Notes: a model not told the origin generated them from the letters alone. A stretch of DNA of 64,000 nt from Schmidtea nova (GCA_044892505.1 CM097882.1:224936001-225000000), one strand, 5' to 3'. Shown: positions 12,100 to 62,950, numbered from the stretch's first letter. Numbers and translations are program-made.

Positions 12100-12989
12100 A
12101 TGTTTTCATAAACGCCAGAGGCTTTGGTGCCTGTAGTGGTGTTAGCATTTCCGATACAACACACGTAAAAGAATCTTACAATAGACGCGTCAGATGTAGC
12201 TATAGGTGCATCGTTATATCAAATCATCGATGGATTATGTGTTCCACTAGCAATTATTTCACAAAAACTTAATGAATGCCAAAAGAAATATTCGACGTTT
12301 GACAGAGAACTATTAGAAATCACAAAATTAATAAAATATTTCCTATATATACTAGAAGGCCTATCTTTTATTATTTATATATATATACTGACCAAAATCC
12401 CTTGACATAATTGTTAATGATGACCAAACCATCGCCCACACCACAGCGGCCACTCAGCTATATATCCTAGTTCAACTGCCAAATTAAATTTATTCAAGGT
12501 CGCAATAACATCGTTGCTGATTACTTCTCACGTGGTATTTCAGCTGCAATATCAAACATGAATTTGATAACAAAAGAGCTGTTACTATACAATTCACCTT
12601 CAAAAGAAAAATTATTCAATTTTTCTTTGGTTATAGAATGAGTAGATGACATTCCATGTCATAATTCCATTCAAATCGTCACTCGGCCAATTTTGGGAAA
12701 GAATCTTCGAAACTTGGCATTTAGTTATTTTCAGAACTTATATACCCAGGAATTATTGGAACTTATGAATATCTGAGGAATCAAGTTTTTTTCTTCCTGG
12801 AATGAGGCAAGATATCAAATATTGGTGCTATTCATGATTGCTTTGCCAATTTCCAAAGATTGTACGTTACACAAAACCAGCGATCCAACATTTTACAACT
12901 GGAAACATATTTGAAACAGTTCATTTAGATTTATTTGGTCCACTTCTATCATGTTCAGGTTATCGCTTCATTTTAAAAATTACTGACAG
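12100..12989 (+). pseudogene. Ty3/Gypsy pol fragment (RNase H-like and integrase N-terminus)
   Basis: DASDVAIGASLYQ, YSTFDRELL, IQGRNNIVADYFSR, H...C..C zinc region, VHLDLFGPL..SGYRFIL. Confidence 0.9.
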
Positions 12990-13645: not shown

Positions 13646-14134
13646 CTATAGGGATTGTAGGAATACTAAAAGCAAATCAGATTTTATTAATAGAAATTGA
13701 TCGCTAATTGATAAGTCGGTTTTTCGCAACCGGAAATCTTGACCGATGATAACAAGAGTTGAAATGAGCAAGCTCCATGACAGTCCGTATTGATTGATTT
13801 CTGGTGGTGGCGAATAATCCTTTAATCGAGATTGATTGTGATCCAATGTATTGATTTGTAGATTTTTTGAGTTAGTCATTTCAGATTTGTCTGGAAAGTA
13901 TATTAATATTGATCCAGTTGTTGACAAGCATCTTCCAGTTTGTACAGCTTCTTTACGCATTCCAGTAGGAAAACATTTCTGCAATCTACTGAACTGGCAA
14001 TTGTTCCTTCTTTGAATATCGACTACACAATCTCCACTAGAGTAGAACTGATAATTGTTGTCATTTGATGAAAATGAGTCACTGTGAATGTCTTGGGTGA
14101 ATGGGTATATCGAATCATTGTTAACAGCTTGCAT
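13646..14134 (-). pseudogene. Nuclear receptor remnant (NR2/COUP-TF-like), first zinc finger missing
   Basis: GDCVVDIQRRNNCQFSRLQKCF.TGMRKEAVQTGR (second finger and T-box, two Cys lost); LBD signature DLSISDQFLLIK; no introns over this span. Confidence 0.75.
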
Positions 14135-15802
14135 TTTGTTTTTTTTTGATCAGCATGAAAGTGAAAATATGTAAATATTAAAACAACATCTATAATTTTA
14201 CTCCATTTAATAATTAATTTATTTATAAAATTGAAAATTTAATCTAAGGCACTACAGGGATCATAGTTTTTTGATTAACAGATCAAATATGATGTGGATT
14301 TTGATCGACCTACATTGATTTCGGCTGTTCTATATTTTAACTGATAATGGAAGCACGCTTGACTGATTTATAATTTTACTAATGTTTATTTAAATATTTT
14401 ATTGATTTTTTTAGATTTTAGATAATTTGCAATCCTCTTATAGCTTCAGCTCTCCAATGGAATTTTTATTCATTTCTTGCCCTTGTCGAATTGGAGGGAA
14501 AAAATCTTTTTATGTTTTATGCTCTATAATATATGTGAGTTTTTATATGTTTGTCTTATTATTTTTTCATTATACATAAATTAAGAAAAGAATAATTATC
14601 GGATCCTCTATTTTTGAGGAACCTTTTATTTAAAGCGTAGTGATTTATATGAATTTGATTTTGACCTTTTACTTTCGGGCCTTTTACCGAAATAGAATCT
14701 TATTTTTACGCTAAAATATCAATTAATTCTTGATATTTCATAATAGACAACAATTGAAAATGTTTTCATAGTTATTACTGATATGCATATCAATATCGTA
14801 TGGTATATCTTTACACGATATTCCAATCTTTATTCGTTTTATGAAAATGAAATCGAAATTTAACTGATAATTATTTTAATGCATGAAGCTTTTCTATAAA
14901 TTATTGCTTCAACACAGATTCTGTTTGCTGTCACTCTTGAAGTACTTTCTTCGTTCACACTTTTACATTCCTATAATATCTTTGTCAACCTTGTCAAAAT
15001 AATTTCACACATATTTTGTAGCTGTGTATGTTCCTCATATTTTAATATTTACTTTGAACAACAACAAAAATAATTCTTTTAAGGAAGCAAACTTTTTATT
15101 ATGTGGACATTATGTATGATCCTGCGACCGTCCCTTTACATCTACGTAAGTATGAGGCTGGACTTCGATGTCTCGTCGACACCATGGGATTGGACAGTTT
15201 GACAGAATTCACTCTATATCTGAACCCATACTGACGTTTCTGCATTGCAACAAGCTGGAGATACTCACAACTAGTAAGCAACTCGGAAGGTCAAGAAAAT
15301 AAACAACAACAAAAAATTCATTTATACACATACAGTGATTTTGCTCCTTGACTGAGAATACATCGATCTTTGAATAAGATTTATTGAATATTGAAAAAAT
15401 GAATCAATAAAAAATATGAATAGCTGGGGCATGAGCCGGTACTGATGTTGGGCCAGACAAATCATCGATAGTCTAAAAGAAAAATAAAATCAATATAAAT
15501 GAATAATATAAAAACAATAACAATAAATAACCAAGTATCAGCAATTCAGCAATATGCAGCAGAATCTGAAATTAACGAACCATGAATTAAAAAAAAGTAA
15601 TAACAATAAAAACTCACCCATGCGGAATAACAATAACTTGAAACTCTGACAAGGCGTGGGCAGATATCACCGAGAATCTACAATAAAATAAATTATAACA
15701 AAAAGATTCACGGATGAATAAACAAAAACCTACCGAATTAGGTACACATAGAAAAACATTAAAAATGAAATGCACACAATATCTGCATGCACACTAAATT
15801 CT

Positions 15803-15984
15803 GATTGGCTTGCCGGCAACACAATTTAGTATAAATACGGCAGCCAAATTCAGTACAAGAGTCAACTTTTACCAAGAGGTCATTCTCACTAAAGAGACAT
15901 TTTTACCAAGTGTCATTCTTCAAGGGATTAGCAATTGTCAGAAAACCATTGTAAATCGAGCTATTGTGGAAATAAAAGGTACGT
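15803..15984 (+). promoter_or_regulatory. CCAAT box, TATA box and first splice donor of unit A
   Basis: GATTGG 15803, TATAAATA 15830, AATAAAAG|GTACGT donor at 15979; same order in unit B (26157, 26183, 26291). Confidence 0.65.
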
Positions 15985-16739
15985 TGGTTTGAATCTTATT
16001 ATTATTGATAAACCCTCATGATAAAAATCAAATAAGTTGTCCCGAAGGTCATCTGATCTGACGGGATCTCGGGCCTCTCAGCGCAACACTTTCTTATGTG
16101 AGGGCTGATGCGGCGAGAGAGATAAGCGACTAAACGGGGGAAGGGTGCACGTAGACATCGATAAATCCTGCGGTAACCGAATGTCATGAGGATATGCCAG
16201 AGATCGTAAGTATATAGTACCCTACATGCAGATGATTCTATCCCCGATTTTACACAGAAATGATGCGGAGTACGAGCTGCATGCACAGTGGATAGGTAAA
16301 CCCATATCGATGCCAAAGTAAAATTAGTCGTATTTCGAGCGGATGAACACTAAGGGGGGAGAGATGATAACCCATAATAAAGCGACGTTAAACAATTTTA
16401 CACATCGAAATCAGACTAAGCACATAGTTTAAACAAATCAACCTACTAAATCGATAGATGATAGTCTGAATTATGACCAAAATTGTGTAGTAAAAGTGTA
16501 GGTCGACTACATAAAAATTATTAGAACAGTAACTGGTAGCTGATCAGACATTAGAAATAATAAATTTAACTCAGTGTCAACAACCGACGATCTTAAGTAA
16601 GTTTCGATTTAATTACGTATGCATAGATATATGCTGAGTATGAGCATGAGGGATGATGAGGTGAACGTGATTGTGGATGGGATGGGATGATGGATTACCG
16701 TGGTTGAATCATGTCTTATCTACGTTGTAACTCCAGATC

Positions 16740-17303
16740 ATGCCGAAAAGAACCCAGATCAGTTACCACTGTCAGTCGAAAGTGAGGAGCATCATAGGTG
16801 CCCCAATGAAGGGAGATATTCCAGTGGCAATCAGAAATGTGGCCGAGAGACATATGCGAGCCTAGAGACGCCGGCATGTCAACATGAGAGCGTCCACCGG
16901 TGAGACCATCTATCATTATCGAATCCGATTGGAAAGCGACTCCTTCTGGCCGGATATGAGAGACAACCATGCCACGACCTCACTAATGTGGTTCATTCAG
17001 TTCGAGGACGACCGAGGGAAAGTTCGCTGGATACTAACCTTCGTCCAGATTCCTATCAATCTCTTCCAACAGCTGGGATACATCTTTCTCAGTCCACCGA
17101 GGTGCAATACAATGGGAGAATCGCGACCCTACATCGACTCTCCAGGACACCGTGACATGCACCAAGAAGTATGGAGTCCGGAAGTAACACTACGGGAAGT
17201 GTTCATATACCATGACGAACTATGTTGGATTCCATGTCCCGTTTTCTATTATCCCGACGGAACCGGCAGAGAAGATAGAACTTGCGACCAAGATTGGATA
17301 TGA
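16740..17303 (+). pseudogene. Novel ORF1, copy A (187 codons, one TAG at 16863)
   Basis: ATG 4 nt after acceptor CTCCAG; MPKRTQ...ERHMRA*RRRH...WFIQFED..RWILTF..LGYIFL.PPRC..G E.RPY..SPG..DM..W.PE..L.E.FIY...LCWIPCP; aligns end to end with 27083-27652. Confidence 0.8.
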
Positions 17304-17527
17304 GTATGACGATTGAGTGAAGTCTCGTGTAGATGAAAATAAATTAGTTAATTTTGTACCTCTTTCTGTTGAATGCATGAAAGGTGTTGAACTGAGGTCT
17401 GGGTTTGATAGATTAAAAGTGTGATTGTGATCGATGGGGGCTGGAAGTGGGAAACGAAAATAAGTTAGACGATTTTGCTACCCTGAATCTTAGAACGAAT
17501 CGAATAACCCACTCAAATCTCTTTTAG

Positions 17528-18085
17528 GTGAATCCGGCTACTAACAATTCCAGTGGGTAAGAAGTACGCTCGTTACGACAACGTATCAGGGCCTTGGAGA
17601 GCCTCGTGAAGCGGCAGGATGCAGAAATAAGTGGACTACAAACGACCTGGTTCAGTCCCGAACCGGTCAAAGAAATCCAAAAACGCCGATACCGAGCAGA
17701 GCGGGCTCTAGAGGACCAGACCCGTGAAGTCGCAGCCACCAAACTGGACCTCAGTAATTACTTAAGAGCCTCCGCGAAAGACTTCGTGACGCAACAATTG
17801 AGACCATTGATTCTAACAAGCACGTTCAATCGTTGGATCGAATCGGCTAGCGTATCGAACGGAACACAAACCAATACGGGCTCTGACTTTATAAGAGAAC
17901 TTCCAAGACAAGTTCCCCAACCGGAGGGATCGAAACGCACCAAGAGAAGGAACCACCTAGGCACTAAGAGGCGTCGAGAAAGACGAGCATACCCGGAAAG
18001 GATTGGGATCGAAGTGGATCTCTTGAGCGGGTTGACAGAAAGGCAATTGTTGGACCTAATCAATCCTGATGTATTACTGGATTAA
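17528..18085 (+). pseudogene. Novel ORF2, copy A
   Basis: Follows acceptor CTTTTAG; coiled-coil-like N-half, TTWFSPE, TQT, Arg-rich KRRNHLGTKRRRERR, Leu-rich tail; TAA at 17558; AATAAA overlaps the stop. Confidence 0.8.
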
Positions 18086-18350
18086 ATAAATGTATTATAG
18101 TTAAAGTGTAGTCTTATGAATGAATGTGGAATGAATGAGAATTTAAGTAAACGATTGATTGAGTATATACAATTCATTAAAAAGCCAAAGGAAGTAAGGA
18201 AAGTAAATCAACCCTAGAAAGAAGAACTATTAGGTAAATAAATGGGGACCGGAATAAAACAACACAAACCTTCTATCGGTAGTGGTGGACCCGTGAATAA
18301 ATAAGGGAATAGTAGCCGCAAGGTTGCTTACCTGCCTTATCATTTCAAAA

Positions 18351-18441
18351 CGTTGATACAGTTTCAACATGATGAGTAGTTAGGGATACATTATGAGTAT
18401 CAGCGGGGGAAGCGTTTTATGTTGGTGAGATTACCCTAACT
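18351..18441 (+). ncRNA. Conserved structured cis-element near LTR end, copy A
   Basis: Outer stem CGTTGATAC/GTATCAGCG, 8-nt 5' bulge AGTTTCAA, inner stem CATGAT/ATTATG, loop AGTTAGGG complementary to CCCTAACT downstream. Confidence 0.6.
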
Positions 18442-19134
18442 AATGACATCAAGCATAATCTTTGTTGTAAAATCTAACCAACAAACCAGCACCGAATAGA
18501 ATAACAGGACGAGCAAAACATCAAACTAACATACTTTGCTCGTTACAAAGTATGATACTTTGTATGAACAGAATGATGCTATCTCTTCAAAGATTTGACC
18601 AGAAATGCGCCTCCGAATATTTTTTTCTCAATTGATAAGAGGTGTTGATCTTTTGTTAACAGTATCTTTAAAATTATCAGAAAGAACCTTGATTATTGGT
18701 GAAAATTTTTACAATACACAAGACTGTTAAAAATAATGAAAATGGCATCACTATACATACATTTTCACAGCATTTAATTAAATGGATGCAGTAAAACAAA
18801 AGCTTCTAAAATGCTTTTTCTGTTGAATTATTTGAATAAATTACTTGAATTTTAATTTATTTAAGAAATATTTTATTTTTACTAAAATATATTTATATTT
18901 ATATATAACATTTAATTATTTAATTTAATAAATTTAATTTTTATCAAAATGTTCTTTTTCATAAATTTTAGCTACTTGAATTTTTTTTACGATTTACTTT
19001 TACATTTTTCATATTTGAGCTATCAAAATTAAAATAATTAATTATAAGATTCTTTTTATTTTTATATTTACCTAATTATCTAATGAATTTTTTAATAAAT
19101 CCTTATGTGTTTCTAATTACTTTTGTTTATTTGG

Positions 19135-19420
19135 TGTTCGCTTAGATTTTTAAGTATACTTCTTGGAGTACCGTTACATGTTGTCACAGATCAATGTGAA
19201 CAATTAAGATCAATTTGAATTTGAAATATTCGGGAATATATCGAATCCATATGGCTTTAAACGACTTCAAACTGTAGCATATCATTTCTAAAAGAATGGA
19301 ATTATCTAGAGGTATCATAGCACTTTAAAGAAATCGCTGAAGACACTATCAAGAAAATATGATTGGTTGAGAGAGTTAAGATTCGTACTTTTGGTATATA
19401 GAAACACATATTCCGATACA
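19135..19420 (+). pseudogene. Ty3/Gypsy integrase core fragment
   Basis: GVPLHVVTDQ..QFE..F...GFKRLQTVAYH..NGII.RYHSTLKKSL. Confidence 0.85.
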
Positions 19421-20690
19421 ATCAAAGTGGTGGGTTGTTGACCGTCAATATGACCTTGAAGTTGCTATGGCTCACACCACCAACTCAAAATTTGTCCGCG
19501 CCGGTATTTCTCGGGCCCTTCCGTCAGATCGGTCTTTAAATCACTTGATTTGCGGTGTCTACAACGAGTATTACCTTATTTGTAGTTATTAAAAACAGTT
19601 ATTTCAAGCAGGCAAAGGGTTATTGATCCCAGAAATGAATTCATACACTTGTATTCATACACAATTCATTCACTTGTATTGATACATTTTATTTTCGTTA
19701 GTATTTGCGATGGTGATATTGGTAATAACCTCAAGTATAGTTTCTTTTTGTTTACAATGTGTGATTGCTATAAATTATTCTACTTTTATTGTTAATTGCA
19801 ATAACTGTATTTTGATGTACCCCTATTGTGTGGGCGATGATTTTCTGCACTTGTATATGTTTTATTTTGTTGAGGAAAGTGATTGTGAGCTGGATTGTGG
19901 GAATAATAAATTTAAAATGGAAATTATGAAAACAAAAAAAATCAATAAATTATCGAAAAACCAATTACTATAGAAAATATTTTGGATTAAGAAATAATAA
20001 GTTTTAAGAAATTGATTAAAAAAAGAAGTTATAAAAGAAACGAACAGATATCAAAAGAAAATTGAATGGACAAAAGAAGGATTGTTTGACTATTTATCCA
20101 CTGTGAGTAATTGTTATTTTTTTCTTATATTTAATTAAATAAAAGTTGTTGTTCGTAAGCTGTTTTTGGTTCTTTTAATCATTTGTTATTTGTTTTAGTT
20201 GTTGCATCCAAACACCCAAACACATTTATATAACATTCACCCCAGCTGTCCCAAGACAGATTTTATCGGAGACTGCTGGGCTGAACAGTTTTCTCTTACA
20301 CATACATTTAATTACATAAATACAAGATTACACAATATAATCATATAATTCCACAATATACAACATCAATCTCAAGTACAATCTGGTCGCTACTCAATTC
20401 GGGAACCAATTATTCCTTTAGAAATACATATATTCGGGAATATTCAATAGCCGTTATTTTTATCTAAATGACTATTATTTTCGTAGTTTTTCCATATTAT
20501 TATGTTTTTCACCTTTAAAATTTAAGTAAACTTTATTTATATCCTAATCCTATTGTCTATCTTGCATTTTTACATTTTTATTAAAAATTTAACATTTAGA
20601 TTTTAAAATTTTGCCGAGGCCTTAGTACAGGCTTTGACTTAGTAAAACTTTCAGTAAAATTTCGGGGTTTTTATCCAACAATATAATTCT

Positions 20691-20870
20691 ATTATTATTA
20701 TCAATAATTCTCATAATGACTATAGATCAAATTTTTTTTATAAAGAATAACACAATATTTCGGCACAGCCTTTGTACACACTTGATAAAGACTGCGCCGA
20801 AATATTGTGTTATTCTTTATAAAAAAAATTTTGATCTATAGTCATTATGAGAATTATTGATAATAATAAT
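20691..20870. repeat. Fold-back (palindromic) repeat family, copy 1
   Basis: ~83-bp near-perfect inverted arms around a 13-bp spacer; followed by AAAAAGATCAAAGGTGAAA..AAGATAATTATG shared with copy 2. Confidence 0.9.
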
Positions 20871-23800: not shown

Positions 23801-23992
23801 TTTTACAAAATAATATATATAATAATTTTAGGATTGAAATAATAGCAATACTATTTATAATTTTTCCTACATAATTTTAAATTTAGAATTTTATAAAATT
23901 TATATAATAATAAAAATTCTGATTTAAAAATCTTTATATTTTAATATAATAATAATAAAATTTGCGATTTGTAATTTTAATATTCTAATAAT

Positions 23993-24370
23993 TCAATCTA
24001 TATGAAGAAAAACAATTAATTTGATAAAAGCCGGATAGACATAAAATATATTCAGCATTAACATCGAGGGCATCTTTGACAGTCTAGGCCGCTGATTTTT
24101 ATTGATTATAGATGCAGCATCATGACTCGTTGTTGTGCTGTTTGTTTGGTTTGATCCACTACTTGACATGCTGAAAAATGTGTGTGGCCCTACGAGATAT
24201 GAAATTGGATTGTTAGATTGATCGGTTCGAGCCAACATTTGATTAGATTGTGACGCAGCTGTTTGAGTGGTTTCTGATGGATTCGTTAGCGGCATTATGA
24301 CAATGTTTGGCGATATCATTGATTGCTGATATTGTGAAAATTGATTCATGTTGGTTGGAAGAAATTGCAT
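23993..24370 (-). CDS. Gln/Ser/Thr/Asn-rich ORF, possible exon or captured 5' gene fragment
   Basis: 125-codon open frame of higher GC and low complexity, resembling a transcription-factor N-terminus; no family motif. Confidence 0.4.
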   Translation of the reverse strand: MQFLPTNMNQFSQYQQSMISPNIVIMPLTNPSETTQTAASQSNQMLARTDQSNNPISYLVGPHTFFSMSSSGSNQTNSTTTSHDAASIINKNQRPRLSKMPSMLMLNIFYVYPAFIKLIVFLHID

Positions 24371-25479: not shown

Positions 25480-25800
25480 CAATTGGATCTTGCCCGTCTA
25501 GAATCACGAGTGCGTATCAAAACTTCTGGATTCTGTAAGTCGGAAACCAATAGATTATTTCTAGAACTTTTCGAGGGTTTCACCTTTATTGGTTTTTTCC
25601 AAATTGATTTTGTAAAAATTTTCAAAAATTTCAAAATTTTCGAGCAAATTCTGATATCTTCCATTTTGATGGCGGTATATATATAGTTGTTTCACACTGT
25701 TATTTTCGTTGATGCATTAGAACAAATTGTTCTAGAAAGAATTTTCGATTCTTTCAAAATTAATTTTAATAATTTTAAGCAAAATTGAATTATCATTTTT
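25480..25800 (-). repeat. Dispersed repeat with promoter-like core, also at 56490-56860 (+)
   Basis: Shared TATATATACCGCCATCAAAATGG..AGA.ATCAGAATTTGC and CTAGAACAATTTGTT. Confidence 0.7.
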
Positions 25801-27082
25801 GCATAAAATTTTAATCAATACAAAAAATTAAATTGAATAATAATAAAATAGCTAACAAGACATTGACAATTCATCAGTACACAGCGAAGCCTGAAATGAA
25901 TGAGCAAATGAATTAAAATGAACAATAACAATAAAAACTTACTCTTGCAGAACGCAAAGAAAAAATAGGACAATGAGTAAGCTACTTAAAACTGACAGTG
26001 AGTGGGCGGACCACTCGGACAATACACAATCTAGAATACAATGATTAAATAAAATAATGTAATGCATCAATAAACAATGAACTCACTGAGTTAACAGCAG
26101 AATGACAGACATTAAAAATGAAATAGCCGACAAAACAACATACAAACTAAATCCTGATTGGCTGACACAAACTGAAAACTGCTATATAAGCAGTAGCCAA
26201 ACTCAGAAAGTTAATGTCATTTTTCACCAAGTGTGTCACACTACTAGTATCGGAAAATCTCTGTAATAGTAATTGAATTGGAAATAAAAGGTATGAAGTA
26301 TTTCATTGTGTCTTATTTGTAAACCCTCATGATCATAAAATGCATAAGGTATCCCGAAGGTCGTCAGATCTGACGGGATTCTGGGCCTCTCAGTTCAGCG
26401 CATTTTCATGTGTTGACTGATGCGGTGAGCGGATTAAATTAACTATCGGGGGAAGGGTGCATATGGAGGCCTGTATTGAATAACATTGGTGCTGGGGAAA
26501 CAGTCGGTGAAAGGAAACATAGATACCGTAACATCACTAAATAAACAACCAAACATTAGTGAGATAATCGAACCAGGGCGATGAGACACGAAAACCTGGT
26601 AAAGGCCAACTAAGTGTCACAGCAAATGAGATCTGTACACCCATGAGAATACAGCATGAAATTTTATGAATCCGACTCCCAGAGTGATGTAGTTACGAGA
26701 AGTAGACAATCGAGAGTAAACAAATAACATCCAAATAAAACGAATGTGATCAGACATACGATCAACATAGTGGTAGCTGACACTAATCAATGAGCGAGAC
26801 TACGTGTAGATCAGTCTAGTACAATATACATACGATCTTTTGGCTATGGTAGATCTAAACATCGTAGGTTACGTAGGCCATTTATATCGTAAATAGTGAC
26901 AAATAAATTAAATAATCAGTTACAAAAACCGAGCAATCACCATTTCATCAAAGGTAAATTTAAAACTAAAGTGTTGATGGATTGATGAAGGTATGAATGA
27001 GCTTGAGTAATACAGGAAATGACTGATCAGTGTGATGATGATTTAACCAACTTTGCATTCTTATCTCTCTATCTCTCAGAAT

Positions 27083-27652
27083 ATGTCCCCGAAAATATCA
27101 CGACGCTACCGTCGTCTGACGAGGAAACCAACGATCATAACCAGCGGTTCAAATTCTGAAGTTCCGATGCGAATCAAAGCGATATCAGAAAGATACATGA
27201 GAGTATGGAGACGGGGCCATCAGGACCTCACTAGTATGACAAAGATCGCTCAATATAATCTTACGATAAGATGGGAGGGCGACCCATCATGGCCGCTATC
27301 AGAATCAAACCAGGTGCGGAATAACCCCAAATGGTTCGTACAATTTGAAGACAACAATGCAACGCCCAGATGGCTCTTAACATTCATGACCATCTCAGGG
27401 AGAGAGCTACAACAGATGGGATACATTCTCTTGGAACGCCCCAGGTGTATCCTTACAGGAGAGCTACGACCGTATTCTAACTCACCGGGGAATATGGATA
27501 TGGACCAGGACAAATGGATGCCAGAAACCAAATTATGGGAGATATTCATATACAACAATCGACTATGCTAAATCCCGTGCCCTGAGTATTTCGAGTCTGG
27601 TAAAACACGAAAACCGAACAGAGAATGTGACCAGGAATGGGTCGAATTTTGA
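27083..27652 (+). pseudogene. Novel ORF1, copy B (TAA at 27569 replaces Trp)
   Basis: ATG after a pyrimidine tract ...CTCTCAG; reading continues IPCPEYFESG...CDQEWVEF* and matches copy A. Confidence 0.8.
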
Positions 27653-27892
27653 AAATGAGTATACAAAACTCAATATCTTGTTATCGTGTCGGTAGAAAAA
27701 TAAATAAATGTGTTACTGAGAGTTTTTTGAGTATTGAACGATGAAAAATGTATGGGTGTTTGAATGAATGAGTAAGACATAAAAGTAAAATATCTGTATG
27801 GTCGAAAAGGGGGTAGAAATTTTGTCAGGAATACACGAGGAGGGGTTGCAGATTGTGACTAAAGCATGACCTAATAAGCGCTATAATTTTAG

Positions 27893-28444
27893 ATGGACGA
27901 GAATACAGATGACCACCGTGAAAATCGTCTATTGAGGAAACGCATAAAAGTCTTAGAGAGCTATATGAAGCGACAGGAGTCCGAGATAAACCTACTGAAA
28001 ACAACCTGGTTTCATCCCGAGCGGGTCAAAGAGATCCAACAACATCGATACCGGGCAGAGAGAGCTCTAGAAGACCAGACCAGAGAAACCGCCACGGTCA
28101 AATTAAAGTTAAACAATTACCTTCGAGCATCTACTAGAGAATTCGTAGAACAACAATTGAAGCCCCTGATACGTGTTAGTACGTTCAACCGATGGGTAGC
28201 GTCAGCTTGTACCAACAGTGAAACCCAAACCGAGGGAAGCTTCACTCCTATCGCGACCATTCCAATTGAAATTACTAAGCCTGAAGGGTCAGCACGAGCG
28301 AAGCGGAGGAATCGCTTAGGCGTGAAACGACGGCGAGAAAGAAGGGCATATGCCGAAAGAATTTGAATTGAGATCGATTTGCTAAGCGGTCTGACGGAGA
28401 AACAACTCCTCAATGTTATCAATCCGGATGTTTTGTTGAATTAA
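27893..28444 (+). pseudogene. Novel ORF2, copy B (TGA at 28364)
   Basis: ATG directly after TTTTAG; TTWFHPE, YRAERALEDQTRE, ETQT, KRRNRLGVKRRRERR, IDLLSGLTEKQLLNVINPDVLL. Confidence 0.8.
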
Positions 28445-28720
28445 ATAAATGTTTTGGTGTTAAAAGTGTTGTCATATGATTGAATGTAGAAAGTATGGAA
28501 AATTCGGTGAATGATGGAATAAATAGGTATATACAATTCATTTTGAAAAGGTATCGAGGAAAAATGTTAAGTAAACGAAACCCTAGGCGTAATAAAAATT
28601 TGTGATGATAAATTGGGACCGGAATAAAACCACACAGACCTTCTATCGGTAGTGGTGGACCCGTGGATAAATGAGGGAATAGTAGCCACAAGGTTGCTCA
28701 CCTGCCTTATCATTCTACAA

Positions 28721-28811
28721 CGTTGATACAGTACCAACATGATGAGTAATTAGGGACAGATCATGGGTATCAACGGGGAAAGAGTGTTTATGTTGCCGAG
28801 ATTACCCTAAT
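28721..28811 (+). ncRNA. Conserved structured cis-element, copy B
   Basis: CGTTGATAC/GTATCAACG, bulge AGTACCAA, CATGAT/ATCATG, loop ATTAGGG with CCCTAAT downstream. Confidence 0.6.
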
Positions 28812-30779
28812 ATTAACATCAAATAAAATCTCAGTTCAAAGACCATACCAACAAACCAGCAAATTCTTAATACACTACCCTATCAGAGCAAGATTAACAC
28901 AAGTGTACCTGTGTGAGCTTGTCTTTTTGGACTTTGGGAAGGTCGTTTTGTGAGCGATGAAATGGCGGTGAGCGACTTATCTGATCAACTGAGAAACCCT
29001 GTGTTGAATGGTTCCTACCGAGTTGAATTCAAGTGCAACACTACGAAACCATCGGGAAGGTCTAAACTCATTGATAGTTAAAAAAATGTTCCATGAAAAG
29101 TGTCGCTGCGCTATCTTTTTAGATTTTTTCTTGAAACGAAACAATCGGTCCGCCCTAAATTTCATCCTACATAAAGTTTCTCAGGGATTGGAATAGTTAA
29201 AAAATTGTGTTAGAACAAGTGATTTAACTCTGATACCTGAGAAAACCTTAAATTCAAAGCAGGCAATGACAAAATTAATTTTCTATCACTCTTAACACTA
29301 ACAGAATATAAATCTATACATTATATCATTTAATTGACAACACGAATCATCTGAGTCTCCTTAGCACTAAATAGAAGATGCATCCTGAAAGTCAGAGAAT
29401 ATCCAGGATATCACCATTGATTGAGTGAACTGTTAACATTATCCAATATTTTTCAAAAGAAGTCAAATAAATAATATTTTGTCACAAGTGACAATTTAAT
29501 TGCGATGACAGTGACTTATGAGCAGTACTCTCTAACAATGTTCTGTCATACTACCGCCATAGCTGACCAAAAACATTAGCAAAATTAGTAGTTGTGAATG
29601 ACGAAAGCCGCCTATAACGACCTTAAGATGTGTCACTGATCACATGAATGGGTCGAAGAGACGGTAAACAGGAACATAGGAATTACGGTGACTCACTTTT
29701 GTGGAAGCAGCATCACAACCGTCGGGAAGAAACTTTTTACAACTTATGTCTTACGTCGATACTGATATATTCCCAGGCGAGTCACCAACTAGTGAACTGA
29801 CAAAGAGCAAGTTACCAAGCAAACATTAAAGAAAAGTCAGAAAAGTGTAATAACGAAGGAGGCAGCTTAAAAATAATGCGCGTGTAATTAGACAATTGAA
29901 GCTCTAAAATAGTATCTAGTTTTAGTAATTCTATAAATATATTATTCCTCGTGCGTAAGAGTTGTAGTTTTTGTGTGCACTTAAGAAAATGTAGAACAAA
30001 AACTCCTAATGAATGAATTCTTTGACCGGGTACGTAGAGAAAAACTAAATTCAATTATAGCAAAGGAGATTTGGATTTTAGAATATTAATTTTTCATATT
30101 TTGTAAAGCATATTATATGTTGATTTTGATAAATTGAAATTAAAGTAAGATTAAAAGTTAGTTTAGTCATGTGACTTTTTATAAGATTCGATATTAGCAA
30201 TTTTGTTGAGAGAAATAGATTCAGTATGAACAGCAGTTGATAAATCGAATTGATAAACCAAATTCGGATGAATAATTTATATTTTTGATAGAATTCAAAT
30301 AACCATTTACAAAATCTTCTTATTTAAAAAAACCCAATGACAATTAACAAAACTGGATTATTAAAACAATCCAATAAAAAAGTAAAAATAAATGATATTT
30401 TTTTATATAAAGTAAATTTCTTAAACACAATTTTAATTAATTATTTTCTTTTAAATAATCAAAATTCTTTTTTTTCGTTTTATTTTGATATGATAGCAAC
30501 ACCCAAATCATGTTTTTGAGAAATATGAGAAAATTAGGGAAAGGAAACCGAGCAGACATTTATAGATATATTGCGGACAATATTACTGAATTCTCAATAT
30601 TTGTATATTAAATGCGTATTGAGAATAGATGAGCACATAGTTTTCAGTTGATAAATGATGTTGGACGACTATTAACATATTGGTTCATCGTCTTTGCATC
30701 CTGATCTCCTATCAGACACTCCGACATCCCCGCCAGACAAAATTAAACTCCAACCACGGTAAAAATGTCAAGGTAAAGG

Positions 30780-30995: not shown

Positions 30996-31111
30996 ATTAT
31001 AAAACTTAAAAACTTTATTTCATTTTTTAGCTTTTGATTTTATTAAAATCAGAAGTTTGGAAAATAATTTTACAAAAACTTTCAAAGTATTTTCAAAAAG
31101 AAAAATTTCAC

Positions 31112-57108: not shown

Positions 57109-58457
57109 TGCTGGGTGGTATGAGTGTTGTTACAAAATTATTACCGACTCCTAGGGGTTAACACAACCCACACCGCAACATAAATGTTACTCCATCACAC
57201 ACGTGTACCCATAGTTATTCCCCAAATAACTATGTTGGCACTGTACACGGTGGCGAGAATCTAGTGAGCAGATGAGCTCTGTTGCCGAAACTACTCCTCA
57301 CTAAATTCTCTCTTTCGGGTTCTTGCTGCCGATAGAATGACTTACGCATCTGCTTTCCTTTCGGTCCTATCACAATTCATCTCAATTATTCATTACTTTC
57401 CGCTGTCAATCATCTCCCTTTTTTCGTTATCAACTAATTCACCAAAACGATGAATTCTCATTGTAATCCCCTTTTCTTCCGCCCAAATTTGGTTCAAGTA
57501 CGCCACATCGCCTAACCCTCCGAAGAGAGTCAGGACGAGAGGCCATTTATTGCCCATCAGGTCGCGAGACCTTAAGGACATGCACTTATTGATTTTTCCC
57601 CCGGCTGTTATGAGGGTTTACCCACAATTAATCATAAAATGTATGATTCGAAATATTTATTGACTACAATTTACATGACATGATTAAATACGATGTACAT
57701 TACAACTACCATGCACAAACCAAACCTACTTACCTACACGACTGGCTGGCGAAACTGAAATTAAACTTTGTTCTAACTTGCAGAACTAACTGAGTGTTTT
57801 CAACTGATTTTTGCGTCTATTTATACTAAAATAGATTGACACCCACGCATATTTTCATTCAATTGATTATATTATGACTGAAACTGAATTTATTTGTTTC
57901 AATAACCGATTATTTATTTATTTTTTTGTAAATTTTATTTTATAATTTTATTTAGTTATTTCTAAGATATTTGATTTTAATTCCGATAAATGATGTGTAT
58001 GTCCTTTGTTTTTGTACATTTATTGATTGATTAAAACAATCAATTTTAATTGAATTCTATTTTTATTCCTACTTCTGTTATTTTGCCGATATTTCAATGG
58101 GGATTTTTCCTATAATTTTTAATAAATTATTTTCTTTAATTTGATGTCAATTTTATTCTTTGACCATGCTTTGCTTTATTTTTATACCAGCAATGATCTT
58201 CCCCATTCAATTCTCGCGCGGTTCTTCATGTGTAAATGCGATCTGCACTCAAATTGTGGGCTCTCTTTTCCATCGTTTAAGCCCTATCTCGACCGACTTA
58301 TCGAATGCGGTTCGTATGATTACTATTGTAATTTACTGTTTTATTTTCTTTTGTGTTAATTTACTGCGTGATGCTTTATCGTGCGTTTTTAAACTTGTTC
58401 CTTTTAATTTTCGATGAATTCAAACAAAATCTTATTTTCGATTTCGCCAGCCTAACA
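57109..58457 (-). mobile_element. LTR C (1349 bp), probable 3' LTR of the gag-bearing element
   Basis: TGTTAGGCTGG...CCACCCAGCA; TATAAATA at 57825, GTAAGT donor at 57733; shares TAAACCCTCAT/GGCCTCTC and the terminal structure with A and B. Confidence 0.75.
57202..57249 (-). ncRNA. Conserved structured cis-element, copy C
   Basis: CGTGTAC/GTACACG, bulge AGTGCCAA, perfect 10-bp CATAGTTATT/AATAACTATG, loop TGGGG with CCCC downstream. Confidence 0.6.
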
Positions 58458-58649
58458 ACACTCCGGGGCCCGTTTAAATTGCGTCCCGCAATTTCATTAA
58501 ATATACATTTCACACATAATTCATGCATACTCATACTTACAACCTGCAGATACATGTCTATCAAGACAAGACAGAATCACATAAGGTGATCGATTCATAC
58601 CAATAAATACCGATAACAGTTACACTGATGATGTCAATGTTATTTCAGT

Positions 58650-61600
58650 TTATTGTTGGATCCTTCGACTCGATGTGGTTTTGTTTTCATATGGTGGGTT
58701 GACTTCATTGATTGCCCCTGATTCACGTCGGACTTGATTCCTGAGTTCGGATTGTGTTGATTCTGGGTTTCTCGATTGTTGATTGACTTGAATGCTTTCG
58801 AGGTTTACGTTTTCTTGGTTGGACGGATTTTGAATTGTTGATGGTTTTCCTTTTAATGTTCTTCCTTGGGATTCTTTCCAGGTGATTAAGTTGACGATTA
58901 TCAGAATACTGAGGTGATGATTATGACAATGACCCATCTTTTTTGATTGGCTTCTTGGATTTGGTAGCCCTTTTCATAGTCTTTTCGTTCTTTTTAATAA
59001 TCCTTGGATTTTCAGGATTTACAGGATTCGGGTTTGATCGTCTTTGTATGGGATCGGTCTTTCTTGGGTTTTTGTGATTGATTCGGCAAATCTCAGTTTG
59101 ATTTGTTATTGCTCATCGGGTTTTTCTTTTGAGTGGGTTGGATTCGGTGTTTTCATCATTAATTTTATATTCAGGATTGTTGGGGTAACGAGTCGATTCT
59201 CCATGATTCTGTCTATTCATATACATTGACATTGATACATATACATTGAAGCACTGTTTGTTCATTCATCATTACTGTGTTATTTACACGAGCGACTTTT
59301 CCATTATTTTACACCAATGTCCTGCACCCAGTCTTTCTCTCTGCCTTCTATTCGTTCTACCAATTTCACGTTCTTGTTTTAATTTCCCAGTTTTGTTCTT
59401 TGACGAATTTCTGTCTATTCTGATCCCATTTTCTTTTCTAAAGCTTCTTGTCAGTTCTTTCTTCTCATCGTTTTCTTTTTCCAATTTCCGTAATGTTCAC
59501 CTAGTTCTCGTAGTTTTCGTTAATTTTCTGCTCTCTTGCTGTACTTCATACTGTCTTTCTTTGTATTTTAAAATTCTATAATATGCATACCCCTGAAGGT
59601 AATAGTATGGTTATACATTTGATTTACACTATCTATATATAGTCATATCCCGACCTCTATTTCACGGGTGTTCTTTTCACTTTGTATTGTCTTGCGTTTC
59701 TTAATCTCTTCAATTTCTTCTCTTATAAAATTTTCGTTTGACTTCATTTCTTTGTGACGTGGTTCCATTTCTCGTGTTCTGGGTTTTACAGTGGACGAGT
59801 TTGATGATTTCTTGATTTTTTCTGGTTTTTGTTTTTTTGAAATACATATACATTGGATTTACATATGATTGTTTTACTACTGACATATACATTTCTTTGA
59901 TTTCTACAAATAGTAATAACATACTGATACTTATACATTGAATTTGCTATTTACCATTGATCCACTTTGTTTGTTTCTACACTTCACTCTTCACCACCTC
60001 ATCGTTTGTGGCGAGAGCTTTTACGGTTTTTACATTGTTTGCGATCTCTACGTGTTCTGATATCAATTCCTCATACTTTAGATTTTCTTTTTCTTTTAAT
60101 CGAGTTATTTCTTGTAGTGCTAATATTAATTGAGTCTGAAATCTGGATATTATTTCTCTTTGCATAATGATTTCTTGTTGATCCGTGTGAATTAACCGCT
60201 TCATTTTGATTAATTGTATCTCTTTGCTTTTATTATCCTCCATCAAGATTTTCCATATTTTCTTAAGATTGTTTACTTGGTTATCCAGTTTGACGATTTT
60301 GTCATCTTTACATTCATTCACGTTCTTCACTTGGTTTTGATTTCTTTGACTTGCGTATTTCTTGTTGTTTTGATCAATTGTCACCTGATTTATTGTTTTG
60401 GTACACTGGAACGCTAAATGCCCTCCTTTTCCGCATTGGTAACATACTTGCATATACTGACGAGGCTCTTTGATCTGTTCTCTCTTTGAATAGTTTTGAA
60501 TAATTCGATTTTCGTAATGCCTTTCCGTTTGTTGGTTATTTTTATCTTTGCATTCGAATTGTTTTATCTCTTTGGTTGTCTTTGGTATAATTTCGTTACT
60601 GATTTTGTCCAGCTAATTTTGGTTTTCTTGTTGTTTCTTGCGATTCCGGCAATTTCTTGAAATGTGCCCTTTTTTCCCACAGTTGTAACATCATTGAATA
60701 CCACAAACTTTCTTTCGATGTCCTTTCCTTCCACATTTGGTATATATTTTATTCTTGAAACAGCTGCTTTCCAAGTGTCCTTGTCTTTGGCAACATTTAC
60801 ACCATTCGTCCTTTTTGTATAAATACTCTTCTTTTATTTCTTGTTGGCCTTTCTTTTTTTCTTTTCACTTTTGTTTCCTTCTTCTGCGTTTCTGGTTTGT
60901 TCTTTTATCTTCTCGACTTCTGTCATATCGTTTATTACTGACAAGTTCATTTATCGTTATATTTTCTATTTCTTCTATTATTTCACTTTCAATTATTGCT
61001 TTTCTGTTTTGTTTTGCTCGATTGTCAATTTCCACTTTTCTTAGCATATTGATCCTTGGTTTATTCTTTTCGTGTTGTTTCCATAGTTCCTCTATCTTTT
61101 GTGCACTCTTACTCCCATTCGCCAGTTTCAACATATTTGCCTTTAGTAATTCCTCTTTTATCTTTCTCCAATGTTCCTCGTTGACACGGGCCTGCCATCC
61201 TCCCAATTTGATCCATTTGAATTCTTCCTAACGGGCTTCTCTGATTGTAAGCTTTTGTGGTTCTGGTTGGCAACCTACCATCATGTTGATTTTCCCTGCG
61301 TTTCCCGTTAATTTCATTCCATTTTCGGTTGACTTCACGATCTCGTCTTTTTTTGTTTGTAATTGTCATTTGCTTGAGCACTCTTTCAAATTGTTTTTTT
61401 CTTTCTTGAAATCTTCCTTGTGATATACGAGGTTCTTCCCCTTTTAGTTTGCTACTACGTTCTTCACCTATTCTTGCCTCTTTTAATTGCAACTCTAGCC
61501 ATTCTCGAAGTTGTTTCACTTGCGGTGTTTCCTCTGTTGATTCAGTTTCTACGGATGTCAATTTGTTTATTCTTGGCTGATTTTGACTTTTGTTTAGTTG

Positions 61601-62950
61601 CAATATCGCTTCTGTTATGGTCGCAAATGCTTTTTGTATATCTTCCACTCCCATTTGAGGTTGTTTGATTCCCGAGTTTTTGGTATTCTCTTGACAGTCT
61701 CTTTTTATTTACCCTTCTTGTTGCAGTCTTGTCCCTCTTTGTATATAACTTTGTTTGTTTTCTTGATCGCCTTGGTCGTTTTCGGTTTCTATTTTATGCA
61801 TCACGCTAATTTTCTGTTGATTTGGTTGCTGCGTTACCCTTGTTATCCCGTTGATTATCTTGTTTAGCTTTGAGATTTCTTCCATTAGTTCTATCTCTCT
61901 GTTATCCTGGTTGTTGTTCATAATGTTATTTTGATTGTAGTTGTTTATTCCGTTTCTATTGATCTGTTGGTTTCTTTGTAGATTTTCTTTGATCCAACAT
62001 TTTCGCGATACATGTCCTAGTTCACCACAACTATAGCATCCACGTACTCCACATAATTTTTTAGTGTGTCCCCACATATCGCACTTTCCGCAATATTGGT
62101 TTTTATAGCACTCACTCTTCGTATGTCCGGATTTCCCACATGTTCGGCATTGTTTGGTTTATTTCTGTCCACGTTTTGGGTGCATCGCTTCCGGCTCTCT
62201 TTTTACTATACAAGTCCAGTGCGCTATCCTTCAAGTATAGCGGGATTCGATTCACTAACGTCTCTGGACTTCATTCGCATACGTCTACAAATATTCCGAA
62301 TTCTTTTAGAAACGTATCTAACCTGCTGGCATCTCCATTGAACGGTTAGCCTTTGAAGTTTTCTCTTAAGTCTTCTTTTGATTCTCCCATTTCTTTGATT
62401 CCGCTGTTTCGAGTTATTTTACTTTCGATTTTCCTCGGCCCTGTTCCAATATTTGGATTTTTATCTGGGTTTTTTTATTTTGTCTTCTGTGTCTTCGTTG
62501 CTGTTTATTGGTTCGTTACTTGAATTTCTTGTTGTTGTTTGGTTGACTTGAGAGTTTGTTTAAATTTCCCTGTTCTCTTTGATACTTGATTCACTGTTTG
62601 TACTCTGGATGTCTTGATCGTCTATTTTTTGATAGGGTCTTTTTATTGATGCTGATCGTGTTCTTCAGATTTTGTCTGCTTCGGATTTGTCTAGAAGTCG
62701 GTTGAATTTGGAACTTGGTTTGAGTTTCTTTTTGTAATGGTTCTCAATTATTTCCAATTTTCTTTCCCGATTTGAATTCCGATTTTTGTACGGTTATTTA
62801 ATTTACTGATGACTTCCTTTCAACTTGGGTTTGTCCTCGTGAATGGTGTTTAACTCTGTAATTTTATGTACTTTTGATTTGTTGGTTGCTGTTGACCTGG
62901 ATTGGTTTCTTGGTTCGATGCTCGTTGAAATCTACAATGTAAAATACACG
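58650..62950 (-). pseudogene. Decayed Ty3/Gypsy gag-like region with seven CCHC zinc knuckles; no pol
   Basis: Capsid-like PFNGDASRLDTFLKEF..RIPLYLKDSAL; knuckle triplets at about 62140-61990 and 60780-60645; single knuckle CYQCGKGGHLAFQC at about 60445; many stops and frameshifts. Confidence 0.85.

What the first reader, a model, noticed from the sequence alone, without database searches (positions are those of the whole stretch)
15446..18491. Giant LTR that contains its own spliced two-gene cassette
Unit A has LTR-type ends and a near-perfect 4-bp TSD, yet holds a CCAAT/TATA promoter, two donors (15979, 16597), two acceptors (16736, 17527), two ORFs and a terminal structured element. All of these are conserved in the diverged unit B (26291, 26954, 27079, 27892). 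LTR C has the same promoter-proximal and terminal motifs but lacks the ~2-kb cassette. Protein genes downstream of the promoter inside an LTR are not typical of Ty3/Gypsy elements. Giant Gypsy (Burro) elements are known from Schmidtea; whether these units belong to them is untested. Inference: a complex-retrovirus-like accessory module that persists in solo LTRs.
Basis: partly seen in the sequence, partly recalled or inferred. Interest (0 to 1): 0.88.

Follow-up and report, generated by a model that had tools for sequence, protein, structure and literature searches.

The report
LTR-like repeat carrying two decayed genes
Two diverged 3-kb copies of an LTR-like repeat each carry the same pair of orphan protein genes with conserved splice-like signals and a conserved folded end. 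The genes were once under selection but are now broken in both copies, and this window cannot show whether the repeat is a true LTR.

Summary
The sequence features are largely real. Units A (15446-18491, +) and B (~25771-28861, +) are about 70% identical. A shorter relative, C (57109-58460, minus strand), shares the promoter-proximal GC-rich element and the terminal element but lacks the ~2-kb cassette.

- **Coding:** both ORFs evolved under purifying selection (pN/pS 0.34/0.88 and 0.25/0.76). Their GC3 (0.46-0.53) is unlike host exons (0.22-0.32).
- **Signals:** donor 1, both acceptors, the ORF2 stop and the adjacent AATAAA fall in aligned columns of A and B.
- **Terminal element:** 85-93% identical in A and B, with 18 compensatory base pairs against C.

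Several claims do not hold up.
- All four ORF copies are broken.
- Donor 2 is not positionally aligned.
- The TSD is 3 of 4 bases in A, absent in C and untestable in B.
- No copy flanks gag-pol.
- Neither protein has any detectable homologue, and the Pfam REV match is sub-threshold.

LTR status, Burro membership and a Rev-like function therefore remain plausible but untested. My best reading (confidence 0.5) is that these are decayed solo LTRs of a retrovirus-like Gypsy-type family whose R region acquired a self-contained, spliced two-gene accessory unit.

The parts
15446..18491 (+). Unit A: the whole LTR-like unit (3046 bp). It runs TG...CA with terminal hexamers TGTTGG / CCAGCA.
15804..15837 (+). 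A: ATTGG (CCAAT-type) motif at 15804-15808 and TATAAATA at 15830-15837. Both are conserved in B (26157-26161 and 26183-26190).
   Evidence: These are motif matches only; no transcript data.
15860..15978 (+). A: predicted non-coding leader exon. The start is inferred as TATA+~30. It ends at donor 1 (AAG|GTACGT, GT at 15979) and contains no ATG.
   Evidence: Donor 1 aligns with B 26291.
16010..16145 (+). A: invariant AAACCCTCAT motif followed by a GC-rich two-hairpin element. The same element is in B (about 26323-26460) and C (57619 down to about 57500, minus strand).
   Evidence: 7 compensatory pairs; z = -2.1; 77% identity A/B.
16160..16736 (+). A: poorly conserved spacer or intron. It holds donor-2-like GTAAGT (GT at 16597) and ends at acceptor 1 (AG ending at 16736).
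   Evidence: 38-51% identity. Acceptor 1 aligns with B 27079; donor 2 does not align.
16741..17303 (+). ORF1 of unit A. Broken: 1 in-frame stop, and its nearest ATG is out of frame with the conserved body.
17528..18085 (+). ORF2 of unit A, starting after acceptor 2 (AG ending at 17527). Broken: 1 in-frame stop and no start codon.
18085..18090 (+). A: AATAAA overlapping the ORF2 stop codon. It is conserved in B at 28444-28449.
   Evidence: Weak on its own, since there are 14-15 AATAAA per unit.
18238..18491 (+). A: terminal structured element and unit end.
25771..28861 (+). Unit B. Its 5' end is undefined because it abuts another repeat at 25633-25818. Its 3' end is identical to A's.
27083..27652 (+). 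ORF1 of unit B. The ATG lies 4 nt after acceptor 1, which is preceded by a strong polypyrimidine tract. Broken: 1 in-frame stop.
27893..28444 (+). ORF2 of unit B. The ATG follows acceptor 2 directly. Broken: 1 in-frame stop.
28607..28861 (+). B: terminal structured element.
57109..58460 (-). Unit C (about 1.35 kb; 5' bound uncertain). It has TATAAATA at 57825-57818, a TAG|GTAAGT donor-like site at 57733, AAACCCTCAT at 57619-57610, the GC-rich element with an AATAAA between its hairpins, the terminal element, and ends CCAGCA. It has no cassette.
59980..62158 (-). Neighbour of C, lying upstream of it on the minus strand. It is a decayed A-rich region with four CCHC zinc-knuckle motifs (nucleocapsid-like) and no other domain.

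Best explanation
Units A, B and C are most likely solo LTRs of one family of retrovirus-like (Gypsy-type) retroelements.

In the short form (C), the layout reads as a conventional LTR:
- U3 is A-rich and ends in a TATA box.
- R holds a short leader with a 5' splice site, then a GC-rich double hairpin carrying an AATAAA.
- U5 holds a conserved folded element and ends in CA.

In the lineage of A and B, a ~2-kb cassette sits between the hairpins and U5. The hairpin AATAAA is gone, and a new AATAAA overlaps the stop codon of the last ORF. The LTR promoter, leader exon, two acceptors each placed just before a start codon, two ORFs and a poly(A) signal together form a self-contained transcription unit inside the LTR.

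**Shown:**
- The anatomy.
- Homology of the signals between A and B.
- Purifying selection on both ORFs.
- Non-host base composition.
- Compensatory base pairs in both non-coding elements.

**Inferred:**
- That the unit is an LTR.
- That the leader is spliced to either acceptor.
- That ORF2 is a nuclear nucleic-acid-binding regulator acting on the element's own structured RNA. ORF2 has long helices, a nearly invariant arginine/lysine-rich stretch and a conserved leucine-rich acidic tail.
- ORF1's role, which I cannot infer. It appears to be a small alpha+beta protein with four conserved cysteines.

Both copies here are dead relics.
For: - TG...CA ends and a 5/6 inverted hexamer in A; a shared sharp 3' end in all three copies.
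- The terminal pattern occurs 3 times against 0 expected.
- C lacks the cassette but keeps both flanking elements.
- pN/pS is 0.34/0.88 for ORF1 and 0.25/0.76 for ORF2. Out-of-frame controls give ratios near or above 1. Third-position differences dominate.
- GC3 is 0.46-0.53 in the ORFs against 0.22-0.32 in host exons.
- Donor 1, acceptors 1 and 2, the stop and the AATAAA are aligned between A and B. In B an ATG follows each acceptor. A's leader has no ATG.
- C has an AATAAA between the hairpins where A and B have none.
- The terminal element has 93.7% of cells paired and 18 compensatory pairs, against 0-3 when partners are slid.
- No gag/pol, PBS or PPT lies beside A or B, which fits solo copies.
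- Giant Gypsy elements with roughly 3-kb LTRs are reported from planarians. [quoted passage not shown]
Against: - No copy is seen as a pair around an internal region.
- The TSD is only 3 of 4 bases in A, none in C and untestable in B.
- The 5' ends of B and C are not defined.
- The U3-like parts of A/B and C do not align.
- An R region of about 2.2 kb, or a U5 of about 2.5 kb, would be unprecedented to my knowledge, and it requires read-through of an internal poly(A) signal.
- AATAAA is frequent here, at 14-15 per unit.
- There are no transcript data.
- No homologue of ORF2 exists among 1.84 billion representatives. No ORF1 homologue was found within the word-search length band. There are no Pfam, PDB or fold matches.
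- The organism is not identified.
Confidence: 0.5

Rival explanations
1. The units are 3'-terminal fragments of a larger retrovirus-like element. The two ORFs would be ordinary accessory genes lying between pol/env and a much shorter 3' LTR, roughly the terminal ~300-400 bp. They would be driven by an internal promoter. On this reading the TGTTG at 15446 is coincidental, or marks a truncation point.
For: - Additional ORFs of LTR elements normally sit between pol and the 3' LTR (PMC7264820).
- Purine-rich runs (PPT-like) lie just upstream of the terminal element in all three copies.
- The 5' ends of B and C are undefined, and the TSD evidence is weak.
- C lies directly downstream of a decayed CCHC-bearing region on the same strand.
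Against: - The terminal element never occurs in the window without the GC-rich element upstream of it.
- No pol or env remnant is detectable upstream of A or B.
- A's upstream flank is not homologous to the flanks of B or C.
- The purine-rich run followed by TG is not conserved between A and B.
- The CCHC region beside C is gag-like, which is the wrong neighbour for a 3' LTR.
Confidence: 0.25
2. The cassette is a passenger. On this reading it is a host or foreign gene fragment, or another small element, that was captured or nested into an LTR. It would have no role for the retroelement.
For: - C shows that the family can exist without the cassette.
- The cassette's GC content (43-47%) exceeds that of the rest of the unit (30-40%).
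- Both proteins are orphans.
Against: - The ORFs stayed under purifying selection while A and B diverged to saturation at synonymous sites. They were therefore kept through many rounds of copying.
- The acceptors and start codons are arranged to use the LTR's own leader donor.
- Codon composition is unlike host exons.
- No terminal repeats or TSD bound the cassette.
Confidence: 0.12
3. A and B are tandem duplicates of an ordinary, lineage-specific host gene with a non-coding first exon and two coding exons. They are not mobile DNA.
For: - The two copies lie in the same orientation 10.3 kb apart.
- They have a TATA promoter, GT-AG signals, a poly(A) signal and selected ORFs.
Against: - A third, inverted copy lies 40 kb away. 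It lacks the ORFs but keeps both non-coding elements and the same end.
- Homology stops exactly at CCAGCA in all three copies.
- The non-coding ends are more conserved than the coding parts.
- GC3 is unlike host exons.
- All four ORF copies are broken.
Confidence: 0.05
4. A and B are the 5' and 3' LTRs of a single old insertion whose internal region (18492-25770) has decayed.
For: The two units share orientation, and the 7.3-kb spacing could hold an internal region.
Against: - LTRs of one insertion diverge neutrally, yet pN is far below pS in both ORFs.
- No PBS follows A.
- No gag/pol domain is found between them.
- Their 70% identity contrasts with only about one disabling stop per ORF copy.
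Confidence: 0.03

Closest known systems
LTRs of giant Gypsy-like 'Burro' elements of planarians (Schmidtea, Dugesia/Girardia)
   Same: - The genome is AT-rich and TE-dense.
[quoted passage not shown]
- That family is noted for accessory ORFs and retrovirus-like features (PMC6431247).
- CCHC knuckles lie next to unit C.
   Different: - No sequence comparison was possible because no Burro reference was at hand.
- The published accessory domains (MATH, BIR, ankyrin, BCL2-like and others) lie in the internal polyprotein or an upstream ORF, not in the LTR.
- None of those domains is found in ORF1 or ORF2.
- The source organism of the window is not established.
Protein gene inside a retroviral LTR (the superantigen ORF in the LTR of mouse mammary tumour virus; from my own knowledge)
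   Same: A protein-coding ORF lies wholly within the LTR and is therefore carried by both LTRs and by solo LTRs.
   Different: - That ORF lies in U3, upstream of the LTR promoter, and is a single gene.
- Here two ORFs lie downstream of the TATA box and have their own acceptors and poly(A) signal.
- No sequence or fold similarity was found.
Complex retroviruses with the major splice donor in R and small basic post-transcriptional regulators acting on structured LTR RNA (deltaretroviruses, spumaviruses, lentiviral Rev type; from my own knowledge)
   Same: - A donor lies shortly after the predicted transcription start inside the LTR.
- There are alternative acceptors, each just before a small ORF.
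- ORF2 is helical and has a conserved arginine-rich stretch and a leucine-rich tail.
- Conserved structured RNA elements are present in the LTR.
   Different: - In those viruses the regulator genes lie in the internal 3' region, at most overlapping U3, and not between R and U5.
- The Pfam REV match is below threshold (E = 0.09, 13.2 bits against a cut-off of 22). It does not cover the basic stretch and is absent for unit B.
- There is no structural match.
Additional ORFs (aORFs) of plant Gypsy elements (Ogre, Retand, Grande, RIRE2)
   Same: - They are orphan ORFs conserved within a retroelement family.
- Some are nuclear.
- Some are spliced (PMC7264820, PMC6431247).
   Different: Those ORFs lie in the internal region, between the 5' LTR and gag or between pol and the 3' LTR. 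The long Ogre LTRs (1.9-6.5 kb) are not reported there as coding.

Membership tests
LTR of an LTR retrotransposon / endogenous retrovirus | Occurs as two direct copies flanking PBS - gag - pol - PPT in full-length elements. | not testable with these tools
   - The window holds no paired copy.
- A and B are not a neutral pair.
- No gag/pol lies beside A or B.
- No other copies were found in the accessible collections.
LTR of an LTR retrotransposon / endogenous retrovirus | 5'-TG...CA-3' termini with short inverted repeats. | tested here: met
   - A has TGTTGG...CCAGCA, a 5/6 inverted match.
- B and C end in CCAGCA.
- B's 5' end is missing or interrupted.
- C's 5' end is only presumed.
LTR of an LTR retrotransposon / endogenous retrovirus | Target-site duplication of fixed length (4-6 bp). 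| tested here: inconclusive
   - A shows CTGA against CCGA (3/4). I estimate the chance of at least 3/4 at roughly 7%.
- No exact 4-6-bp repeat lies within +-6 bp for A or C.
- B is untestable.
LTR of an LTR retrotransposon / endogenous retrovirus | U3-R-U5 organisation with a promoter and a poly(A) signal. | tested here: inconclusive
   - A TATA box is conserved in A, B and C.
- Candidate AATAAA signals sit between the hairpins in C and at the ORF2 stop in A and B.
- AATAAA is common here, and no transcript ends are known.
Burro (giant planarian Gypsy) | Sequence similarity to Burro LTRs or a physical link to the Burro polyprotein. | not testable with these tools
   - No Burro sequence was available, and Grohme et al. 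2018 is not held.
- Only the size and context argument from PMC6431247 applies.
Rev/Rex-type retroviral regulators | Sequence or structural homology to the family. | tested here: not met
   - Pfam REV gives E = 0.09, below the cut-off, for A only.
- PDB sequence search found nothing.
- BFVD fold search gave no match at E <= 0.001.
Rev/Rex-type retroviral regulators | Expression from multiply spliced mRNA, and binding to a structured cis RNA element of the same element. | not testable with these tools
   Only sequence signals and conserved structures are available. There are no RNA or binding data.
Host protein-coding gene (tandem paralogues) | Host-like composition, intact reading frames, and homology confined to the gene with no transposon-type ends. 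| tested here: not met
   - GC3 is 0.46-0.53 against 0.22-0.32 in host exons.
- All four ORF copies are broken.
- A third, inverted, ORF-less copy shares the same end.
Known structured RNA families (Rfam), including hammerhead ribozymes of retroelement repeats | A covariance-model match. | tested here: not met
   There were no matches at gathering thresholds in the window. Only chance-level hits (E > 0.6) appeared in 15200-18700.

The most novel reading that the evidence does not exclude
A flatworm retrovirus-like element has moved a complete, spliced, two-gene regulatory unit into its LTR, between R and U5. The unit has its own acceptors, start codons and poly(A) signal, and uses the LTR promoter and leader donor. 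Every LTR, including solo LTRs left after the element is lost, would then be an autonomous gene for two orphan proteins. One of these would be an arginine-rich regulator acting on the LTR's own conserved RNA structures.
Probability: 0.35. Interest if true: 0.8.

Novelty: new variant of a known kind. Interest (0 to 1): 0.55.

Why it matters
If the unit is a true LTR, it would be an unusual architecture: accessory genes downstream of the LTR promoter, duplicated at both ends of the provirus, and retained by solo LTRs. That would bear on three questions.
- How complex regulation arose outside vertebrate retroviruses.
- How an element tolerates a very long R or U5 region.
- Whether thousands of solo LTRs in a genome can act as dispersed small genes.

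It would also give two orphan protein families and two covarying RNA elements a concrete context to study. If instead the cassette lies in the internal region of a larger element, the finding becomes an ordinary case of accessory ORFs next to a 3' LTR.

Tried and rejected
- **Rfam** on the window and, permissively, on unit A found nothing. The idea of a hammerhead or retrozyme-type ribozyme in the GC-rich element was dropped.
- **tRNA genes:** none in the window. I considered by eye a PBS-like reading of a TGG-starting stretch in the terminal element. I rejected it because the stretch is not next to an LTR end and is not conserved in C.
- **Protein homology:**
  - Three word-index searches were blank. 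These see only proteins of 0.55-1.75 times the query length.
  - The one exhaustive HMMER search, with the ORF2 profile, returned 0 hits. ORF1 never had an exhaustive search, so longer relatives or fusions are not excluded for it.
  - The exact-sequence look-up of 10 window proteins found none in the collection.
  - The PDB sequence search was blank for both ORFs.
- **Structure:**
  - AlphaFold models had pLDDT 67 for ORF2 and 50 for ORF1.
  - Foldseek gave no match at E <= 0.001. Given the low model confidence, these blanks say little.
- **Pattern scans** of metagenome and IMG/VR contigs:
  - The strict pattern gave 0 hits.
  - The loose pattern gave 7 loci, L001-L007.
  - These loci show no profile similarity to the unit and are chance matches. 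I did not use them further.
- **A and B as one element's two LTRs** was rejected on selection and on the absence of PBS, gag and pol.
- **Internal short LTRs or TIRs within unit A:** none found.
- **Link of A to the RNase H fragment at 12169-12402 (+):** rejected. No other pol remnant lies between them, a nuclear-receptor exon sits on the opposite strand in between, and the composition differs.
- **Joined spliced model:** I did not search with a joined leader+ORF model. The exons were treated one by one by reference, and the leader is non-coding.


Full report
**Setting.** The window is AT-rich, mostly 23-35% GC, with one N run at 1200-1431. It holds the following host and repeat features.
- Host-type exons:
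  - Two exons of an SLC52-type riboflavin transporter on the minus strand, at 43961-44362 and 31023-31430.
  - A nuclear-receptor zinc-finger exon at 13646-14134 (minus strand).
- Repeats and remnants:
  - A Tc1/mariner remnant at 46517-47524.
  - Two isolated RT-RNase H fragments, at 12169-12402 (+) and 33939-34247 (-).
  - A BED finger at 10762-10971.

The source organism was not identified.

| Part of the unit | A/B identity |
|---|---|
| First ~550 nt | 51-67% |
| GC-rich element | 77% |
| 16160-16740 (effectively unalignable) | 38-51% |
| Coding parts | 43-75% |
| Last 250 nt | 85-93% |

A profile of the 5' part found a third copy, C, on the minus strand. Reading it and aligning it shows the following, in order:
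- a TATA box;
- a TAG|GTAAGT donor-like site;
- the invariant AAACCCTCAT motif;
- the GC-rich element;
- about 115 nt of purine-rich spacer;
- the terminal element, ending CCAGCA at 57109.

C has no cassette. A pattern of three invariant blocks of the terminal element matches the window exactly three times, against none in 100 shuffles.

**The genes.**
- The two ORFs are 48% (ORF1) and 61% (ORF2) identical in protein between A and B.
- I ran Nei-Gojobori counts on each ungapped open segment separately.
  - ORF1 gives pN 0.34 and pS 0.88; ORF2 gives pN 0.25 and pS 0.76.
  - Synonymous sites are saturated.
  - The same DNA read out of frame gives ratios of 0.6-2.0.
  - Differences by codon position are 44/35/64 and 42/29/66.
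- Both ORFs were therefore true protein genes kept by selection while the A and B lineages diverged. This also rules out A and B being the two LTRs of one insertion.
- GC3 is 0.46-0.53, against 0.22-0.32 for the host exons in the window.
- None of the four copies is intact today. I give counts only.
  - ORF1 of A has one in-frame stop, and its nearest ATG is in a different frame from the conserved body.
  - ORF2 of A has one in-frame stop and no start codon.
  - ORF1 of B has one in-frame stop.
  - ORF2 of B has one in-frame stop.

**Expression signals.**
- The ATTGG and TATA motifs are conserved in A and B.
- The following fall in aligned columns:
  - donor 1 (AAG|GTACGT in A, AAG|GTATGA in B);
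  - acceptor 1;
  - acceptor 2;
  - the ORF2 stop;
  - an AATAAA overlapping that stop.
- In B an ATG follows acceptor 1 by 4 nt and follows acceptor 2 directly. Acceptor 1 of B has a striking polypyrimidine tract in an otherwise A-rich strand.
- A's predicted leader has no ATG. B's has one, if transcription starts at TATA+25.
- Donor 2 is not in aligned columns. Both copies merely have a strong GTAA donor 139 nt (A) and 125 nt (B) before acceptor 1.
- No RNA data were available, so splicing is inferred.
- I did not search with a joined leader+ORF model. The exons were handled apart, by reference.

**Non-coding elements.**
- *Terminal element.*
  - The RNAalifold structure on A, B and C has 53 pairs, with 93.7% of cells paired and 18 pairs carrying compensatory changes.
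  - Column shuffles give 7.4 +/- 2.0 compensatory pairs.
  - Sliding the partners by 1-3 columns gives 0-3.
  - The structure was derived from the same three sequences, which inflates these figures somewhat.
  - A's single-sequence stability is unremarkable (z = -0.74).
- *GC-rich element.* It forms two hairpins with 7 compensatory pairs and z = -2.1.
- Both elements are more conserved than the proteins, which marks them as cis-acting signals.
- Rfam knows neither.

**What are the proteins?** Nothing known.
- Pfam gives no domain. The REV model scores 13.2 bits (E = 0.09, cut-off 22) on A's ORF2 only, and not over its basic stretch.
- The word-index searches were blank.
- The exhaustive profile search with ORF2 found 0 of 1.84 billion representatives.
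- The PDB search was blank.
- ORF2 is predicted all-helical (pLDDT 67; helices 2-19, 22-86, 114-144 and 149-156). It has a nearly invariant Arg/Lys-rich stretch and a conserved Leu-rich acidic tail.
- ORF1 models poorly (pLDDT 50) as a small alpha+beta protein.
- Foldseek gave no match at E <= 0.001. With such models this says little.
- ORF1 never had an exhaustive search, so longer relatives are not excluded.

**Is it an LTR?**
- *For:*
  - TG...CA ends with a short inverted repeat.
  - A shared, sharp 3' end.
  - An A-rich sense strand.
  - A promoter near the 5' end.
  - Length variants within a family.
  - Absence of PBS, PPT and gag-pol beside A and B, as expected of solo copies.
  - A literature precedent for roughly 3-kb LTRs on giant planarian Gypsy elements (PMC6431247).
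- *Against or missing:*
  - No pair around an internal region.
  - A TSD of 3/4 in A only, with nothing exact within +-6 bp for A or C.
  - B's 5' end abuts an unrelated repeat that also occurs next to C (25633-25818 and 56462-56643).
  - C's 5' end rests on a pentamer that chance would supply.
  - C lies downstream of a decayed region with four CCHC knuckles on the same strand. That is the wrong neighbour for either a 5' or a 3' LTR, so C is either a solo insertion into an older element or part of something rearranged.
- No further copies could be fetched. The accessible collections gave only chance matches.

**Proposed mechanism (confidence 0.5).**
- *How C reads.* C reads as a conventional U3-R-U5, with an AATAAA between the two R hairpins.
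- *How A and B differ.* That AATAAA is absent. A ~2-kb cassette follows the hairpins, and a conserved AATAAA overlaps the ORF2 stop. After it comes the U5-like terminal element.
- *What the cassette is.* On this reading it is a self-contained transcription unit embedded in R. The LTR promoter makes a leader that is spliced from donor 1 (or donor 2) to one of two acceptors. Each acceptor places a start codon first in the mRNA. Short transcripts end after ORF2, while genomic transcripts must read through.
- *ORF2.* It is the best candidate for a nuclear nucleic-acid-binding regulator acting on the conserved structures. This resembles how complex retroviruses work, but membership in the Rev/Rex families was tested and not met.
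- *Main rival.* At 0.25, the cassette is ordinary 3' accessory coding sequence of a larger element with a much shorter LTR.
- *Other rivals.* A passenger cassette (0.12), a host tandem gene (0.05) and one element's two LTRs (0.03) are less likely, for the reasons given in their sections.

**Comparison and novelty.**
- In plants, additional ORFs of LTR elements are described in the internal region (PMC7264820). Burro's extra domains lie in its polyprotein or in an upstream ORF (PMC6431247).
- To my knowledge a protein gene wholly inside an LTR is known for the mouse mammary tumour virus LTR, where it lies in U3.
- A spliced two-gene unit downstream of the LTR promoter would be a new variant of a known kind, if the LTR status holds.
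- The repeat itself may already be in planarian repeat libraries that I could not consult.

- While reading by eye, I worked out in my reasoning where some of the breaks lie, before restricting myself to counts.
- My first notebook entry lists the open-segment bounds that the ORF listing returned, and these implicitly bound some breaks.
- Once in my reasoning I recalled from memory a short motif of a known retroviral protein.

Noticed in passing
window 39720-40804: A tandem array with a 157-bp period and about seven copies. The central copies are 99% identical. It lies inside the large intron of the SLC52-type gene.
   Followed up: no
window 43961-44362 (-) and 31023-31430 (-): Two exons of an SLC52-type riboflavin transporter gene, matching profile positions 51-170 and 175-250. 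They are separated by about 12.5 kb of repeat-rich intron. No further exon was detected below 31 kb.
   Followed up: partly
window 13646-14134 (-): A 162-aa ORF carrying the second half of a nuclear-receptor C4 zinc-finger domain (E = 1e-7). It is probably a host exon, and it lies 1.3 kb upstream of unit A on the opposite strand.
   Followed up: no
window 46517-47524 (+): A Tc1/mariner remnant. HTH domains and a DDE_3 domain sit in two adjacent ORFs.
   Followed up: no
window 25633-25818 (+) and 56462-56643 (-): An unrelated short repeat, 78% identical between its two copies. One copy sits directly at the 5' side of unit B and the other about 450 bp beyond the 3' end of unit C. It hides B's true 5' end.
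   Followed up: partly
window 12169-12402 (+) and 33939-34247 (-): Two isolated RT-RNase H fragments of Gypsy/BEL-type pol (E about 4e-15), with AT-rich, decayed composition. No link to units A-C was found.
   Followed up: partly
window 58500-64000 (-): A long tract that is A-rich on the minus strand (AT skew down to -0.49 on the plus strand). It holds four CCHC zinc-knuckle motifs and lysine/glutamate-rich decayed ORFs. It looks like the gag/nucleocapsid part of an old retroelement and runs off the window end.
   Followed up: partly
window 182-242 and 48518-48578: A 61-nt direct repeat, 95% identical, with copies 48 kb apart. It is probably a small dispersed repeat.
   Followed up: no
window 18522-18562: A 17-nt near-perfect hairpin 30 nt downstream of unit A's end. 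It overlaps a chance-level mir-375 hit (E = 0.71).
   Followed up: no
window 10762-10971 (+): A BED-type zinc finger in a 70-aa open segment (E = 2e-5). It may be a remnant of a hAT-like or domesticated transposase.
   Followed up: no
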